64,000 nt of DNA from assembly GCA_033442325.1 (NCBI GenBank), contig JAWQFM010000001.1, positions 444,966 through 508,965 of the forward strand. Reading direction: 5' to 3'. This stretch comes from Salpingoeca rosetta. Taxonomy: Eukaryota; Protista; Choanoflagellata. The position numbers and the translations under genes were made by a program. The notes under the pieces were generated by a model, which was not told where the DNA came from, did not search any database, and saw only the letters and a program-made list of their open reading frames with translations. This document shows, piece after piece, positions 40,309 through 48,061 of this stretch (within the stretch, counting starts at the first letter, position 1; every line of letters begins with the position of its first letter).

Positions 40309-43300
40309 ATGGGCGATGCTTCCGCAAAGGGATCAGCAGAGCCCACGATTTTCATCTCTTTGCGGTTCTCCGAGGCGGGGGCAGCCGGAAAAGAGCTCAA
40401 GCGGCAGCTGGAGACGCAGCACAGGCTGACCTGCTTTCTCTGCGACGTCGAGCCTGGCAACGACATCTCCAGCAACATTGTGGCCGCGTTGGACGCGTGC
40501 AAGCTCGCCGTCATCATGGGCACGCGCACGTACGGACAGCCGACGCCAGCCAAGTTCAGCACCTTTGAAGAGCTGCGCTTCATCATCAACGAGAACAAAC
40601 CGTTCTTCCTCATCAAGATGTGCGACCGATTCGAGGTGCCAGACACGCGATTCCGGCTCCCAGATGACATCTCATACTTTCTATGGAGGGACGGCGCCGC
40701 CTCGTCATCAGCACCAGCACCACCCATTCCCCGCAATCTAGTGCAGCAGATTGTGTCTCGACTGAAAGATGCACAAGCGAACCCAACAGCGCCACGGCAG
40801 CCATCGCAGCCACCGCGCGCGCTGCGGGTAGTACCGCAGCGCTTGGACGAGCGCCTGACAAAGTGGCTGGATGCGCGCGACCTGCTGCACAGCATCGGCG
40901 TTGCGCTGGAGAAGAACGGCGTGCACACCATGGCTCATCTTCGCGCCATATTGCTTCGCGAGGGCGACGCGGCCTTTCAACAGGTGGGCGGCGTGCTCTC
41001 TGTGTGGTCGTTGCTCAAGCACCGCGTGCGCCCGCTGCACATTGCGCTGTTCCACGACGCGTGCCGCGAATCAGACTGGATGGCACCCCTCCCGGCAAGC
41101 AGCGATGACGACGACGATGCTGCTGGTGATGCTGATGATGATAATGGTGATGAGAGTGGAAGGCGTGGCGCTGGTGTGAGTATTGGCCCTCGAGTCGCTG
41201 CTGGCCGTCATGGTGATGCCGGTGATGGCAGCGGTGGTCAGCAGAAGAACGTGAGCAGCAGCAGCAGCAGTGGCAGGCAGGTTGTCTCTGGCACGAGTCT
41301 TGACAGTACTGGCCGTGCGAGCGCGGAAGCTGCTGTAACATTCAAGACTACCCCCACCACCGCCACCACCAATAGTAACAACAACACCAACAGCAATGAC
41401 AACAGCAGCCGTGGCCGTCACGACCGTGGGAGCACCGATGCAAGTGACCCCGCTGCTCAGTTGGATCGCCTTCAAGTTGATGGCGCCTTGATGGGTGACA
41501 GTCGTGGCAGTGTCAGTGGTGCTGATGTTGAAAGTGGCAGTGGTGGTGGCAGTGGCAGTCGGTTTCTCGGTGCTCTGCTGCCACGACGGGGAAGGAGAGT
41601 GACGTTCGCAAACGCGGCCGAGACATTCAGCCTGTGGTACACCGCCGCCCCTCTACTCGGCAATGGGGATGACAGTAATGGTGATGGTGACAGTAATGGT
41701 GATGGTGGTGGTGGTGGTGGTGGTGGTGGTGGTGATGCAAAAAGAGCGTTTCTGGCCAAGCTGTCGCAGATCAAGAGCAAACGCGTGCAGGACCAGATTA
41801 TGGAACTGTGGAAGGGGACCAACCCAACACTTGTCGAGTAAGTATAAACGGTGTTTGGACACGTGCGTGTGTATAGGCGGTGCTGGACACGTGTGTGTGT
41901 GTGTGTGTGTGTATAGACGGTGTTTGACACGTGTGTGTGTGTGTGTGTGTGTGTGTGTGTGTGTGTTATACTGTGGTGTGCTGTATGTTGTGCTGTGTGT
42001 CCGTCCGCAGTTGTGCGGATTCTGATGTGCAGCGATTGTGAGGGGCGCCTTCATGCTGTCTCACATGAAACCGTCATGCCTCTTGTCCACATTTCCACGT
42101 GTGTGCTAGTTTGTTTGAGTGCCAGCTCGGTGAATCGGCTGGAGAAATTCTCGCGCTCGCCGTCAAGGGTGCCAGTACTTTCGTGTCCCTCGGGTACGTG
42201 ACCTCTGACTTGCTGCTGTTGTCGCTGCGCCCACCTGATCTCCATCACACCCCTTCACTCATCGTACACAACAACAACAACAACAACAACAACAACAACA
42301 ACAACAACAACAACAACAACAACAACAACAACAACAACAACAACTGCTTGGCATCTTTCACTGTTGACATTGTGCTCATCGCCAAACACCATCACCGCCA
42401 CTACTAATTCCGCCACCCAATCACCACCCAATCACCAGGCTCGACAACAACCGTCTTGGTGACGCTGGTTGCGCTGCGTTTGCGTCCATCGTCGGCGACA
42501 CAGAGGCCCTCGCCAAGCTGTTGTATGTGCTGTTGCACCTTGCTTGTGCTCGGTTGTTTGGCTGGCCTTGCTTGTCTTGTAATGACTGCGCTTGTCTGTT
42601 TCGCTTGGTTTGGTTTCGGTTTTGTGAACGTACTCCTGTGTAGCAGTCTATCGATGACAGTGCAGCTGGCACTCATTTGCCTGTACTCTCCCCCTCCCCC
42701 ATTCACATCCCCACCATCACCACTGCTGTTTGCAGTTTGTGCAACAATCGCATTTCGGACATGGGCGCGACGGCGCTGGCGGATATGCTCAACACCAACA
42801 CGCATTTGCGCGAACTCAGGTGCGCCTCGCCGTGCTCACACCGCCTCTTTTATGTGTGTGTGTCTGTGTGTGTGTCTGTGTGTGTGTAAATCAGTGAAAG
42901 AGAGCGAGCGTGTGAGATTGGCAGTTCAAGCATGAGCGTCGATGCGTGTATGCGCGCCTTTGCATTCGTCCACATGCATACAATACGCGCATACACACTC
43001 GCTCAACCATTCTCGCTTGTATTCCTGTTCAACGTTTCGTTGGGGTGCAGACTGCACGACAACCGCATCGGTGACTTCGGTGCCACGGCAATTGCAGAAA
43101 TGCTTGCAAGCAACAAGTCCCTGGAAATCCTGGAGTGAGTGGAGATGACAGTTCTGGCGCTGTTCTACTGCGTGGTTGTTTCAGTGCATACATTCACGTA
43201 CACATAGACACACACGCACACACACACACACTCACACACATACACGCACACAAAGGCACTCACATAGACACACACTGCCTTTCTCGCTCACGCACACGCG

Positions 43301-46300: not shown

Positions 46301-48061
46301 CCACAGCACGCAGGGCCCTGGCATGCAGCACCTTCGCTCGCTGCTGCGGTGCGCGTGGGTGGAGGTCGTGCAGAAGGACATCCAGGTGCCCAAGGTTGTG
46401 GAGCTGATTGGGGATGGGCTGGAGGCGTGTCGCAAGAAGCATGCGGGGCCCTGGCGCATCACGGAGCTGCAGTCGTTTCTCAAGGAAACGGTTGAAGATC
46501 TGCGACACATGCAAGGGCTCACGGACACCATCTTCGCCAAGGCCCTCAGGTCGGTGTTGCGCTGTGTGCTGCGCGATTTGGGTGCTGCATGCTGTGGCTT
46601 TGTGGTGTGCCGTTGTGGCGCAGGTCGTGGCTGTGTATCGTAGTTGTTTATTCATGTACATGCTGCCATGTTGCCGTCTTTGTTACCAGGTTTGTGTGCG
46701 TTTCGTTCTGCCCACTCACACCCGCTTTGCCCTCCTTTCTCTCCTCTGCTCCCTTCTCGCCCTCCCTTGCCCCATCTCTTGCCTCCACGTGCAGCTACCT
46801 GCATGTGCGTGGGGACATTCTGTGGTTCAGCAGCGTGCCGTCCCTGAGCGAGCACGTGTTTGTGTCGCCGTCGTGGCTCCTCAGCAACATTGTTGGGCCC
46901 GCGCTTGCGCCAGAGCATTTCATCATCAAACGCCTCAACCCCCGTGATGGGGAGGTCACGTTTGATGAAATCAAGCACGTGTTTGGCGAGCTCATGCCCG
47001 CAGACTTGGTGGTGGACGTGTTGTCCAGCATGCTGCTGTGCTTTGAGCTTGCAAGCAGCAAGCGCGGCATTGGCAGCCACCACCGCGTGTTCATGCTGCC
47101 CTCGCGCCTGGAAGCGAACACGTCGCGCATATGGGAGCCTGACGGCGCGGCGCAAGTGTTTGCTGGGCGGCGGCTCGTTGTCAAGGACAGCAGCGGGATG
47201 GTGTTTCCACCCGGCCTATTCCCGCGCGTGCAAGTCCGCCTGTTCTCGTTCTTTGGCGACTCGATGAGTCTTTGGCGCGCCGGGTTTGCTGGGTTGTTTC
47301 AGATGGTCGAGTGCTTTGGGCGTATGAGTGGCAGCGTGATTGACGTCTGGGTGCGCGCGCCGCAAGGCTTTCACGAGCTTGCCTGGATGGTCCTGCACAT
47401 GGTAAGTGAACACGACACTGTAGGTGTTTGTGCGTGCGTGTGTTTGTGCGTGCGTGCGTGCGTGTGTGTGTGTGTGTGTGCGTGCCTGCGTGTGTGTGTG
47501 TGTGTGTGTGTGTGTGTGTGTGTGTGTGTGTGTGTGTGTGTATGCGTGTGTGTGTGCGTGCATGTGTATGTGTGTATGCGTGTGTGCGTGTGTGTTTGTT
47601 TGTGGCCTTGCTTGTATGTGGCGTTGTGCTGCGTTGTGCTGTGTGCAGCTTTGTCGCTTGTGTGCTGCAGTGCGTGCCGTTACAACTTCCCCAAGCTTGG
47701 CTTACGTGCCTGTCCTTTTCCTGCCTCGCCCTTCACCACCTCATCGAACCCTTCCTGCCACCCTCACTCGCCAACCCCACGCGCGCAGGTGATGCAAGAG
47801 GTGAAGTTTGAGGCCGAGGGCATCACGACGGAGGAGTTTATCGTCAGCTTCAGCCACTTGTCGCGCTACTTTCCGCACCCGGCTGCATATTTGCTGTCGG
47901 ATGTGCAGGACGCCGAGGATGGCTATGTCTCCACCACGTACCGTGATGCCCTCACATTGGCATCATCATCATCATCGTCGTCGTCGTCGTCGTCGTCGTT
48001 GAAGCCATCTGTGACGGACAAGACAGACAATTTGCTGCGGCGTGAACTCTTTCTGTCGTGA
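40309..48061 (+). CDS. Roco-family protein with architecture TIR - SAM-like - RI-type LRR - Roc GTPase - COR
   Basis: Exon 1 (40309-41837) holds a TIR domain (TIFISLRF...IVAALDACKLAVIMGTRTYG...STFEELRF) and a SAM-like segment (LTKWLDARDLLHSIGVALEKNGVHTMAHL). Ten 84-nt LRR exons (LxLxxNxLGxxG) and one 93-nt exon follow. Roc motifs are KVFVCGDYGIGKTTL, ERTSGIQV, VYDFAGQLDYHVVH and VVVGTKVD. COR motifs are YLHVRGDILWF...VFVSPSWL and FPPGLFPRVQV. Confidence 0.9.
42270..42344 (+). repeat. (AAC)n microsatellite in an intron
   Basis: Perfect AAC run. Confidence 0.95.

What the first reader, a model, noticed from the sequence alone, without database searches (positions are those of the whole stretch)
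40309..48061. TIR-SAM-LRR-Roc-COR: candidate NLR-like innate immune receptor using a Roco GTPase switch
Seen in sequence: one spliced ORF joins an N-terminal TIR domain with a Glu at the expected catalytic position (STFEELRF), a SAM-like segment, ~11 ribonuclease-inhibitor-type LRRs, an intact Roc G-domain (GDYGIGKTT, T, DFAGQ, TKVD) and COR, with no kinase. Established: TIR domains act as NADases when oligomerised, SARM1 uses SAM domains to cluster its TIR, Roc-COR is a nucleotide-controlled dimerisation module, and prokaryotic Rocos that carry TIR usually have it C-terminal. Inference: the LRR senses a ligand, Roc-COR changes oligomeric state, and SAM/TIR fires. That is effector-switch-sensor logic like plant TIR-NLRs, built on a GTPase in a probable unicellular relative of animals. 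I know of no characterised protein with this domain order.
Basis: partly seen in the sequence, partly recalled or inferred. Interest (0 to 1): 0.85.

Follow-up and report, generated by a model that had tools for sequence, protein, structure and literature searches.

The report
TIR-SAM-LRR-Roc-COR gene in a choanoflagellate
This is a real, transcribed 15-exon gene of the choanoflagellate Salpingoeca rosetta that joins a probable NAD-cleaving TIR domain and a SAM-like domain to a leucine-rich-repeat sensor and a Roco GTPase switch. It is one of six such genes in the genome, is built like an immune receptor, and has never been tested.

Summary
Fifteen GT-AG exons (40309-48061, + strand) give a 1471-aa protein. 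Its parts, in order:
- a TIR domain whose Glu88 is invariant in the family
- a five-helix SAM-like domain
- a 220-aa disordered linker
- eleven 28-residue ribonuclease-inhibitor-type LRRs, ten of them on separate 84-nt phase-2 exons
- a Roc domain with intact G1, G3 and G4 motifs
- a divergent COR, and no kinase

Stranded RNA reads and transcript contigs join exon 1 to the LRR exons at the predicted sites.

The genome is Salpingoeca rosetta. It holds six loci with this architecture, four of them annotated but uncharacterised. It also holds about 13 Roc-COR-TIR loci and a PARP-LRR-Roc-COR gene. One paralogue carries 95-97% identical tandem copies of an LRR exon plus intron.

The NLR-like reading is reasonable but untested, and it is not new as an idea:
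- LRR-Roco proteins with one LRR per exon are published candidate immune receptors in brown algae.
- N-terminal TIR on Rocos has been noted.
- A 2026 preprint shows that a different S. rosetta protein with a C-terminal TIR makes cADPR.

Verdict: a new variant of a known kind, so far seen only in this species, in a genetically tractable relative of animals.

The parts
40309..48061 (+). Whole coding span: 15 exons, 1471 codons plus stop. Exons: 40309-41837; 42110-42193; 42439-42522; 42736-42819; 43051-43134; 43332-43415; 43532-43615; 43771-43854; 44100-44183; 44339-44422; 44679-44762; 45139-45231; 45476-46549; 46795-47401; 47789-48061.
   Evidence: All introns are GT..AG and the frame stays open. 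RNA joints for exons 1-8 sit exactly at these borders, and a transcript contig runs 860 nt further. The last three junctions agree with the annotated paralogue proteins.
40143..40308 (+). 5' untranslated region (minimum extent)
   Evidence: A transcript contig of run X6 reaches 107 nt upstream of 40250. 40309 is the first start codon after an in-frame stop.
40345..40803 (+). TIR domain (residues 13-165). The candidate catalytic Glu88 is the codon at 40570-40572, within FSTFEEL.
   Evidence: TIR_2 E=0.012 for this gene. The C29 paralogue scores 29.9 bits in the genome scan, above the cut-off of 28. AF2 model pLDDT 84.9 with a five-strand beta-alpha fold. The top Foldseek matches are MAL, SARM1/TIR-1, L6, RUN1, SNC1 and MyD88 TIRs. 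The family profile hits the Roq1 TIR at E=0.0017 and SARM1 at 0.016. E88 is invariant in 52 aligned relatives.
40840..41076 (+). SAM-like five-helix domain (about residues 178-256)
   Evidence: AF2 model of residues 170-262: pLDDT 82, five helices. VIA-align against 48,161 PDB representatives: ranks 1-31 are SAM domains (p73, EphA1/2/5, Caskin2, tankyrase, SARM1), Z 4.8-6.6, rmsd 2.2-3.9 over 58-74 residues. Four of the only five Foldseek matches are SAM, none significant. Homologue P0109 hits SAM_2 at E=0.0073. No Pfam SAM hit for this gene itself.
41095..41748 (+). Low-complexity linker rich in Gly, Ser, Asp and Ala (residues 263-480), retained in the mRNA
   Evidence: Composition. Continuous same-strand RNA coverage and no GT-AG joint inside exon 1.
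42110..45231 (+). LRR region: ten 84-nt phase-2 exons, each one 28-residue RI-type repeat, plus a 93-nt capping repeat (residues 510-821)
   Evidence: Exon borders and repeat register. Partial LRR_6 hits on single exons. LRR_6 scores 4e-13 to 5e-30 in paralogues. Exons are about 50% identical at DNA level, maximum 61%. Consecutive splice joints only, with no exon skipping at the depth available.
45570..46240 (+). Roc GTPase domain: G1 GDYGIGKTT at 45591-45617, G3 DFAGQ at 45936-45950, G4 TKVD at 46140-46151. A Ser-rich insertion of about 60 residues lies between G1 and G3.
   Evidence: Pfam Roc 38.7 bits, above the cut-off of 27. Motifs verified. Weak PDB sequence hits to the LRRK2 Roc domain.
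46431..48058 (+). COR region (COR-A then COR-B; residues about 1140-1471), spread over the end of exon 13, exon 14 and exon 15
   Evidence: COR-A E=7.6e-5 and COR-B E=0.15 for this gene. COR-B spans profile positions 3-129 of 145 in paralogues, E down to 9e-5. hhalign of the family's COR region to a bona fide COR-A from locus L007 gives E=2.8e-4 over the YLHVRGDILWF...VSPSWLL motif. Relatives P0160-P0162 carry precomputed PF16095.

Best explanation
SHOWN. This is an expressed gene of Salpingoeca rosetta. None of the searches named a secretory or membrane domain, which suggests a cytosolic protein; signal peptides and membrane helices were not tested for. It encodes a group-1 Roco protein (LRR-Roc-COR) with a TIR-SAM cassette and a disordered linker added at its N-terminus. 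It is one of six paralogues with this order.

INFERRED MECHANISM, by analogy with TIR-NLRs, SARM1, bacterial Roco proteins and brown-algal LRR-Rocos:
1. At rest, the RI-type LRR horseshoe and Roc-COR hold the protein in an inactive nucleotide and oligomer state.
2. A ligand or a perturbation sensed by the LRR shifts the monomer/dimer cycle of Roc-COR.
3. This brings the N-terminal TIR domains together, possibly helped by the SAM-like domain, so that a composite active site forms around Glu88.
4. The TIR then cleaves NAD+ and either makes a cyclic ADP-ribose-type signal or depletes NAD+.

The output would be a defence or stress response of the cell. The family's copy number and LRR-exon turnover fit a sensor repertoire.
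For: Gene and transcript.

Organism and paralogues: annotated S. rosetta proteins map at 99.5-100% identity to loci of this genome (names).

TIR: fold and invariant Glu88. A paralogue's TIR hits Thoeris ThsB at 6e-7. The feature search puts the TIR-SAM segment nearest SARM1-family clusters, as a lead only.

SAM-like fold.

Roc: intact G motifs, with the switch-II Gln kept.

COR.

Family context:
- Six TIR...Roc...COR loci.
- 13 loci with a Roc hit followed 2.6-3.5 kb downstream on the same strand by a TIR_2 hit. One was checked exon by exon and reads Roc / COR-A / COR-B / TIR.
- PARP-LRR-Roc-COR in PTSG_10355, a second NAD-using head on the same chassis.
- Units of LRR exon plus intron, about 700 bp, repeated five times at 95-97% identity in paralogue L002.

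Literature:
- Roc-COR cycles between monomer and dimer with nucleotide state (PMC5714945, title and abstract listed; PMC6337361).
- LRR-Rocos with one LRR per phase-2 exon are proposed immune receptors in brown algae (PMC11378527).
- A TIR from another S. rosetta protein makes cADPR in a Glu-dependent way (bioRxiv 10.64898/2026.04.20.719644).
Against: - There is no biochemical or genetic data for this gene or its TIR subtype.
- TIR_2 and both COR models score below Pfam's cut-offs for this protein.
- The SAM call rests on a predicted fold at modest Z.
- The nearest named relative of the Roc-COR part outside the species is plant TORNADO1, a developmental gene according to the title of the Cnops 2006 reference cited in PMC11378527.
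- This TIR subtype has at least 33 copies in the genome in many architectures (SH2, helicase, PDZ), so it could be a general adaptor.
- The LRR exons of this particular gene are old duplicates (about 50% identical), and no alternative splicing was seen.
- A Ser-rich insertion of about 60 residues sits between G1 and G3 of Roc and could alter GTPase behaviour.
- There are no data on induction by microbes.
Confidence: 0.45

Rival explanations
1. A non-immune signalling scaffold. Here the protein is an ordinary group-1 Roco, like plant TORNADO1 or human MFHAS1, working in cell-state, developmental or environmental-cue signalling. The TIR and SAM-like domains would serve as protein-protein adaptors (TIR-TIR, SAM-SAM) that recruit other members of the large S. 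rosetta TIR network such as TIR-SH2 and kinase-TIR proteins. Any NADase activity would be absent or secondary.
For: TORNADO1 is the closest named homologue of the Roc-COR part outside the species. The same TIR subtype is fused to SH2, PDZ/Smr and a SecA-like helicase in S. rosetta. A Ras-PH-kinase-TIR gene also exists. Richter 2018 proposed streamlined TIR-kinase signalling in choanoflagellates (PMC6040629). This gene's LRR exons are old and stable.
Against: Glu88 is invariant in all 52 aligned relatives, alongside a strongly conserved surrounding motif. That degree of conservation is more than a pure adaptor surface would be expected to need (inference). The best sequence and fold matches include the catalytically active TIRs Roq1, RUN1, SARM1 and ThsB. 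A sister gene carries PARP, another NAD-using enzyme, in the same position.
Confidence: 0.3
2. A suicide or NAD-depletion executor rather than a signal generator. The architecture and trigger are the same as in the best explanation, but activation collapses NAD+ and kills or arrests the cell, as SARM1 does. No nucleotide second messenger would be read by a downstream effector.
For: The pairing of TIR and SAM otherwise typifies SARM1. SARM1-family clusters are the nearest named clusters by the feature search, and SARM1 SAM and TIR appear among the fold matches. The preprint notes that some eukaryotic TIRs deplete NAD+.
Against: In that preprint most tested eukaryotic TIRs, including the one from S. 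rosetta, made cADPR without depleting NAD+. The domain order (TIR then one SAM-like domain) differs from SARM1, and no ARM auto-inhibitory domain is present. No candidate reader protein was searched for here, so the two variants cannot be separated.
Confidence: 0.15
3. An annotation artefact or decaying gene. The TIR exon and the Roco exons would belong to different genes, or the locus would be a pseudogene.
For: Transcript contigs break at 41670-41745, so no single assembled contig spans all of exon 1 and exon 2. RNA depth is low, at 1-6 reads per joint.
Against: The break coincides with a (GGT)n coding repeat that the tool skips. Raw stranded reads cover both sides on the same strand. The contig starting at 41746 is spliced at 41837>42110 and onwards. 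The frame is open through 15 exons. Five other loci keep the same order.
Confidence: 0.03

Closest known systems
Group-1 Roco proteins (LRR-Roc-COR): Chlorobium tepidum Roco, plant TORNADO1, human MFHAS1
   Same: N-terminal LRRs followed by Roc and COR, with no kinase. Plant TORNADO1 proteins are the best named hits to the Roc-COR part outside S. rosetta (E about 1e-9, 25-27% identity) and also carry LRR_6-type repeats.
   Different: The protein carries an N-terminal TIR, a SAM-like domain and a 220-residue disordered linker. The main Roco review does not mention TIR (no occurrence in PMC6337361). Its COR is divergent and scores below Pfam cut-offs.
Brown-algal LRR-ROCO candidate immune receptors (Zambounis 2012 as cited in Teng 2024; Teng 2024, PMC11378527)
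   Same: LRR-Roc-COR with each LRR on its own phase-2 exon, an expanded gene family, exon duplication or shuffling, and a proposed role as NLR-like receptors. In S. rosetta there are ten 84-nt phase-2 exons in this gene and 95-97% identical tandem exon-intron units in a paralogue.
   Different: Algal exons are 72 bp and encode 23-24-residue repeats; here they are 84 bp and encode 28-residue RI-type repeats. The algal proteins have no effector domain; here there is a TIR-SAM head. Alternative splicing of LRR exons is reported in algae but was not seen here at low depth.
S. rosetta Roc-COR-TIR family (C-terminal TIR)
   Same: Same organism, with Roco and TIR in one protein. About 13 loci have a TIR_2 hit 2.6-3.5 kb downstream of Roc. 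One was verified as Roc / COR-A (68.7 bits) / COR-B / TIR_2. A 1352-aa S. rosetta protein, F2UB80, with its TIR at 1034-1255, produced cADPR in a Glu-dependent way. I did not verify that F2UB80 belongs to this family.
   Different: The TIR lies at the opposite end and is a different subtype (box 1 is DAFISYRQ rather than IFISLRFSEA). There is no SAM-like domain. The COR type differs: those loci do not appear among the 19 matches to this gene's COR.
Plant TIR-NLRs (Roq1, RPP1, RUN1, L6)
   Same: An N-terminal TIR with a catalytic-position Glu, a nucleotide switch and an LRR sensor in one cytosolic protein. Their TIRs are the best sequence-profile and fold matches.
   Different: The switch is a Ras-like Roc GTPase with COR, not a STAND NB-ARC ATPase. 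The order is effector-LRR-switch rather than effector-switch-LRR. The protein works like these at most; it is not a member.
SARM1 / TIR-1
   Same: It combines SAM-fold and TIR domains. SARM1 TIR and SAM appear among the fold matches, and SARM1-family clusters are nearest by the language-model feature search.
   Different: SARM1 is ARM-SAM-SAM-TIR and forms an octamer through two SAMs. Here there is TIR followed by a single divergent SAM-like domain, no ARM, plus LRR-Roc-COR.

Membership tests
Roco proteins | Roc: a Ras-like G domain with G1, G3 and G4 motifs | tested here: met
   Pfam Roc 38.7 bits against a cut-off of 27. GDYGIGKTT, DFAGQ and TKVD verified.
Roco proteins | COR domain directly C-terminal of Roc | tested here: met
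   Below Pfam cut-offs but consistent and in the right order. COR-A E=7.6e-5 and COR-B E=0.15. COR-B spans profile positions 3-129 of 145 in paralogues. hhalign to a bona fide COR-A gives E=2.8e-4. Relatives P0160-P0162, matched at E about 1e-88 to 1e-91 over 90% of the Roc-COR region, carry PF16095.
Roco proteins, group 1 (LRR-Roc-COR) | LRRs immediately N-terminal of Roc; no kinase | tested here: met
   Eleven LRRs end at residue 821 and Roc starts about residue 853. No kinase family matched any of the three long exons, and the paralogue proteins show none.
TIR domain | Five-stranded parallel beta-sheet flavodoxin-like fold with box-1 strand | tested here: met
   Predicted only. AF2 pLDDT 84.9 with the expected strand/helix order. 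The top 18 Foldseek PDB matches are all TIR domains, TM (target) 0.5-0.7.
TIR domain | Score above Pfam's TIR_2/TIR gathering threshold | tested here: not met
   16.5 bits against 28 for this gene. Paralogue PTSG_12838 scores 27.4 bits as a protein, and its TIR exon at C29 scores 29.9 bits in the genome scan. This is a divergent subfamily rather than a non-TIR.
Catalytic (NADase) TIRs | Glu in helix alpha-C at the position of SARM1 E642 / RUN1 E100 | tested here: met
   E88 in FSTFEEL lies in helix 85-94, after strand 66-71. It is invariant in 52 relatives. The motif lines up with the stretch just after where the Roq1 alignment stops. The residue-level equivalence is inferred from the motif, not from a superposition.
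Catalytic (NADase) TIRs | NAD+ cleavage or cADPR-isomer production | not testable with these tools
   Needs an enzyme assay. Only a different S. rosetta TIR subtype has been assayed.
SAM domain | Compact five-helix bundle of about 65-70 residues | tested here: met
   Predicted only. The first 31 of 48,161 PDB representatives are SAM domains, Z 4.8-6.6. These Z values are modest for a helical domain.
SAM domain | Match to Pfam SAM_1/SAM_2 | tested here: not met
   No SAM hit for this gene at E<=5. One homologue (P0109) hits SAM_2 at E=0.0073, below the cut-off.
SAM domain | Self-association | tested here: inconclusive
   The complex-prediction job on two copies of residues 1-262 gave no verdict. 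This is evidence neither for nor against.
NLR / STAND receptors (TIR-NB-LRR) | STAND NTPase (NB-ARC or NACHT) between the effector and the LRR | tested here: not met
   No NB-ARC or NACHT hit. The NTPase is Roc, and the order is effector-LRR-GTPase. This is an analogue, not a member.
SARM1 family | ARM-SAM-SAM-TIR order | tested here: not met
   The order here is TIR, then one SAM-like domain, then LRR-Roc-COR, with no ARM.

The most novel reading that the evidence does not exclude
Salpingoeca rosetta uses Roco GTPases where plants and animals use STAND ATPases. The six TIR-SAM-LRR-Roc-COR genes, the roughly 13 Roc-COR-TIR genes and the PARP-LRR-Roc-COR gene would together form a cytosolic immune-receptor repertoire. 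Its LRR exons would diversify by tandem exon duplication, and its output would be NAD+-derived signalling or NAD+ depletion. [quoted passage not shown]
Probability: 0.3. Interest if true: 0.8.

Novelty: new variant of a known kind. Interest (0 to 1): 0.6.

Why it matters
A published survey of choanoflagellates found no canonical NLRs; it detected NACHT-plus-LRR proteins but no Death or CARD domains (PMC6040629). How the closest relatives of animals sense intracellular threats is therefore largely open, apart from cGAS-STING.

A family that joins a Glu-bearing TIR (or PARP) to an LRR sensor through a Roco GTPase would be a concrete candidate. It would also be a natural test of whether Roc-COR can stand in for a STAND ATPase as the oligomerisation switch of a TIR enzyme. 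That bears on how LRRK2-type Roc-COR modules transmit signals.

By my own knowledge, S. rosetta can be transfected and edited with CRISPR, and the TIR assay needed has just been applied to another protein of this species. The hypothesis is directly testable.

If the family turns out to be a housekeeping scaffold, the finding reduces to an annotation of an unusual Roco subfamily.

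Tried and rejected
I laid 40250-43880 instead. The joints of exons 9-15 are therefore supported only indirectly: by the contig's length, by a loose end that equals the start of exon 9, and by paralogue proteins.

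2. phmmer of the TIR-SAM segment against PDB sequences gave nothing meaningful. A family profile was needed.

3. A profile of the COR region against PDB sequences gave no Roco hit.

4. Pfam on single 27-residue LRR exons gave only partial LRR_6 hits, because the exon borders split the Pfam repeat unit.

5. Complex prediction with two copies of residues 1-262 returned no verdict, score 0.00. It is not used as evidence either way.

6. The search for related loci with the TIR family alignment in 185,579 bacterial and archaeal genomes used one peptide pattern and confirmed no relative. This is a weak negative. A prokaryotic origin of this TIR subtype is neither shown nor excluded.

7. Tandem Repeats Finder missed the 700-bp units in L002 because its longest period is 500. 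The repeat finder found them.

8. The C26:706642 locus, first counted as a C-terminal-TIR Roco, is a Ras-PH-kinase-TIR gene and was removed from the count.

9. The window's own annotated protein never appeared in the protein databases searched, so I could not get its PTSG number or look up published expression data.

10. Searches for long proteins (741-2359 aa) sharing this TIR or this Roc-COR returned only S. rosetta proteins plus plant TORNADO1 and one metagenome receptor-like protein. These searches score at most 8000 word-sharing candidates, and transcriptome proteins are often fragments, so "restricted to S. rosetta" is provisional.

Full report
**What is in the sequence**

Reading the + strand from the ATG at 40309, fifteen exons with GT..AG introns join into one open frame of 1471 codons. 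It ends at the TGA at 48059-48061. Ten consecutive exons are exactly 84 nt long and all lie in intron phase 2. Each encodes one 28-residue repeat, and a 93-nt exon supplies an eleventh, capping repeat. The repeat consensus is xLxxNRLGDxGGxAxxxxLxxNxxLxxL, the ribonuclease-inhibitor (LRR_6) type.

Pfam on the long exons gives:
- Roc above threshold (38.7 bits)
- COR-A at E=7.6e-5 and COR-B at E=0.15
- TIR_2 at E=0.012
- no kinase

**Transcription**

On 40250-43880, two raw stranded RNA-seq runs of 2026 and the contigs of two older runs from other studies were laid.
- Coverage lies on one strand only. It is continuous over exon 1 and absent from the introns.
- Joints fall exactly at 41837>42110 and at every border of exons 2-8.
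- One contig covers 40250-41669 and runs 107 nt further upstream.
- A second contig starts at 41746, is spliced through exons 2-8 and continues 860 nt. Its loose end at 43854 equals the start of exon 9.
- The 76-nt gap between the two contigs is a (GGT)n coding repeat that the tool skips. Raw reads flank it on both sides.
- No exon-skipping joint was seen, but depth is only 1-6 reads per joint.

The TIR exon and the LRR-Roc exons are therefore parts of one mRNA. The last three junctions rest on agreement with paralogue proteins.

**The N-terminal domains**

An exhaustive phmmer search with residues 1-262 found 616 relatives, 373 of them at E<=1e-10. They share a 145-residue domain of 40-57% identity with consensus IFISLRFxEA...GTxTYG...FSTFEELRF...KPFFLVKMC. 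In an alignment of 52 relatives, G76, E88, C105 and W126 are invariant.

With that alignment AlphaFold2 gives a confident model, pLDDT 84.9. It has a five-strand beta-alpha fold followed by a helical bundle.
- All the best Foldseek matches in the PDB are TIR domains: MAL, SARM1/TIR-1, L6, RUN1, SNC1 and MyD88.
- The family profile hits the TIRs of Roq1 (E=0.0017), SARM1 and RUN1/RPV1 by sequence.
- A paralogue's TIR hits Thoeris ThsB.
- E88 lies in the helix after the third strand, in an S-T-F-x-E-L motif that corresponds to the S-x-W-C-x-x-E-L motif of plant TIRs. This is the catalytic position, inferred from the motif and the model rather than from a superposition.

Residues 178-256 were modelled alone (pLDDT 82, five helices).
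- Foldseek gave no significant match, though four of its five weak matches were SAM domains.
- An exhaustive structural comparison with 48,161 PDB representatives put SAM domains in the first 31 places, Z 4.8-6.6.
- Pfam SAM models do not match this gene. One homologue matches SAM_2 at E=0.0073.
- Many metagenomic relatives are short two-domain TIR-SAM-like proteins. The N-terminal head therefore looks like a pre-existing TIR-SAM cassette.
- A language-model feature search placed the segment nearest SARM1-family clusters. This is a lead only.

I accept "SAM-like" at fold level, with moderate confidence.

**Roc and COR**

Roc keeps the P-loop, the switch-II DxxGQ with its Gln, and a TKxD G4 motif. 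It has a Ser-rich insertion of about 60 residues between G1 and G3.

COR is divergent but present:
- COR-A and COR-B hits fall in the right order in this gene and in all paralogues, with COR-B spanning almost the whole profile.
- The family's COR region aligns to the COR-A of an unambiguous Roco from the same genome at E=2.8e-4, over the YLHVRGDILWF...VSPSWLL motif.
- Closer relatives carry precomputed COR-A annotations.

**Organism and family**

The annotated Salpingoeca rosetta proteins PTSG_12838, PTSG_12575 and PTSG_07288, and a fourth merged model, have the same domain order and are 43-51% identical to this protein. They map at 99.5-100% identity to other loci of the window's genome, so the genome is S. 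rosetta.

Six-frame searches of the genome found:
- 33 copies of this TIR subtype
- 19 loci with this COR type
- by pairing coordinates, six loci with TIR...Roc...COR on one strand: C1 (this gene), C19 twice, C2, C29 and C26

Thirteen further loci have a Pfam TIR_2 hit 2.6-3.5 kb downstream of a Roc hit. One of them, on the same contig, was checked and reads Roc / COR-A (68.7 bits) / COR-B / TIR_2. A fourteenth candidate turned out to be a Ras-PH-kinase-TIR gene. A relative of the same Roc-COR clade, PTSG_10355, carries a PARP catalytic domain with LRR-Roc-COR.

The paralogues also have 84-nt phase-2 LRR exons. In PTSG_12575 a 700-bp unit of exon plus intron is repeated five times at 95-97% identity. 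In the window's gene, by contrast, the ten exons are only about 50% identical.

Searches for long proteins sharing this TIR or this Roc-COR returned only S. rosetta proteins, plant TORNADO1 and one metagenomic receptor-like protein. A pattern scan of prokaryotic genomes confirmed no relative of the TIR subtype. Both negatives are weak.

**How it probably works**

What is shown is the anatomy and the expression. The mechanism is inferred.

Roc-COR modules cycle between monomer and dimer with nucleotide state (PMC5714945, abstract listed; PMC6337361). From general knowledge of SARM1 and the plant TIR-NLRs, TIR enzymes need self-association to form an active site. SAM domains commonly multimerise. 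RI-type LRRs are ligand-binding or auto-inhibitory surfaces.

The simplest reading is a cytosolic sensor. An LRR-sensed event would shift the Roc-COR state and bring the TIR heads together. NAD+ would then be cleaved around Glu88, either to a cADPR-type signal or to depletion.

Points in favour of a conflict or defence role:
- the family expansion
- the recent LRR-exon duplication in a paralogue
- the exchange of NAD-using heads (TIR or PARP) on the same chassis
- the invariance of the Glu

Points against certainty:
- the developmental role of TORNADO1
- the wide use of this TIR subtype with SH2, PDZ and helicase partners in the same genome
- the old, stable LRR exons of this particular gene
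- the complete absence of functional data

A complex prediction for two TIR-SAM copies gave no verdict and is not used.

**Comparison with what is known**

The protein is a member of the Roco family, group 1 (LRR-Roc-COR), with an added head. It is not an NLR, because it has no STAND ATPase and the domain order differs. It is not a SARM1 orthologue. It can at most work like them.

The concept is not new:
- Brown-algal LRR-Rocos with one LRR per phase-2 exon, exon shuffling and alternative splicing are published candidate immune receptors. That paper also notes N-terminal TIR domains on Rocos of "different organisms" (PMC11378527).
- A 2026 preprint shows Glu-dependent cADPR production by the C-terminal TIR of the S. 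rosetta protein F2UB80. Its figure of tested proteins uses LRR, Roc and COR labels. I could not confirm which protein carries those labels.

On the other side:
- The main Roco review does not mention TIR.
- The choanoflagellate gene-content survey lists Ank, Arm and SH2 as TIR partners and reports no canonical NLRs (PMC6040629).
- No paper in the library combines choanoflagellate, TIR, NLR and Roco.

The TIR-SAM-LRR-Roc-COR order itself is annotated in databases but uncharacterised, and so far seen only in this species.

**Verdict**

This is a new variant of a known kind. Interest 0.6.

The scan noted the same stretch in other first-stage readings (s1-436020, s1-436109, s1-436197). These agree with what I tested here.

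Noticed in passing
L002:2175-6260 (G000:C19:339474-343559), paralogue PTSG_12575: A unit of about 700 bp, made of one 84-nt LRR exon plus its intron, is repeated five times at 95-97% nucleotide identity. This points to recent tandem exon duplication or gene conversion inside a Roco gene.
   Followed up: partly
P0162 = PTSG_10355 (elsewhere in the genome): A relative of the same Roc-COR clade carries a PARP catalytic domain (PF00644) together with LRR, Roc and COR. It is a second NAD-using domain on the same chassis.
   Followed up: no
L007:3068-7419 (-) = G000:C1:989567-993918, about 500 kb from the window's gene: A bona fide Roc / COR-A (68.7 bits) / COR-B / TIR_2 gene with a C-terminal TIR. 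Twelve more loci show the same Roc-to-TIR spacing of 2.6-3.5 kb.
   Followed up: partly
L006:4116-6863 (+) = G000:C26:706615-709362: A single 916-codon open frame encodes Ras - PH - protein kinase - TIR_2. It is a 'kinase TIR' with a Ras-like GTPase head, not a Roco.
   Followed up: no
P0159 / L003 (G000:C2:394500-403200): The public gene model fuses a TIR-LRR-Roc-COR paralogue to a TsaD/Kae1 domain (PF00814). This is probably two neighbouring genes merged by annotation.
   Followed up: no
window 41226-41469: RNA and contig depth rises two- to three-fold, and odd joints and loose ends appear inside the low-complexity coding stretch. The likely cause is cross-mapping of other transcripts with similar simple repeats, not splicing.
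   Followed up: no
P0134, P0113 (metagenome contigs of 4.5-7.8 kb): The same TIR subtype (42-51% identical) sits at the C-terminus of an NPHP3_N P-loop + WD40 protein and at the N-terminus of a long WD40 protein. Each is a single long open frame on a short contig. The source organisms are unknown.
   Followed up: no
window 53303-54577 (+): An open frame with a C3HC4 RING finger at its C-terminal end. It is a neighbouring gene with no evident link to the Roco gene.
   Followed up: no
window 41880-41970, 43886-43987, 47440-47600 and others: The introns of this gene are rich in (GT)n near their 5' ends and (CA)n or C/T-rich tracts near their 3' ends. The repeat at 43886-43987 blocked read laying.
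   Followed up: no
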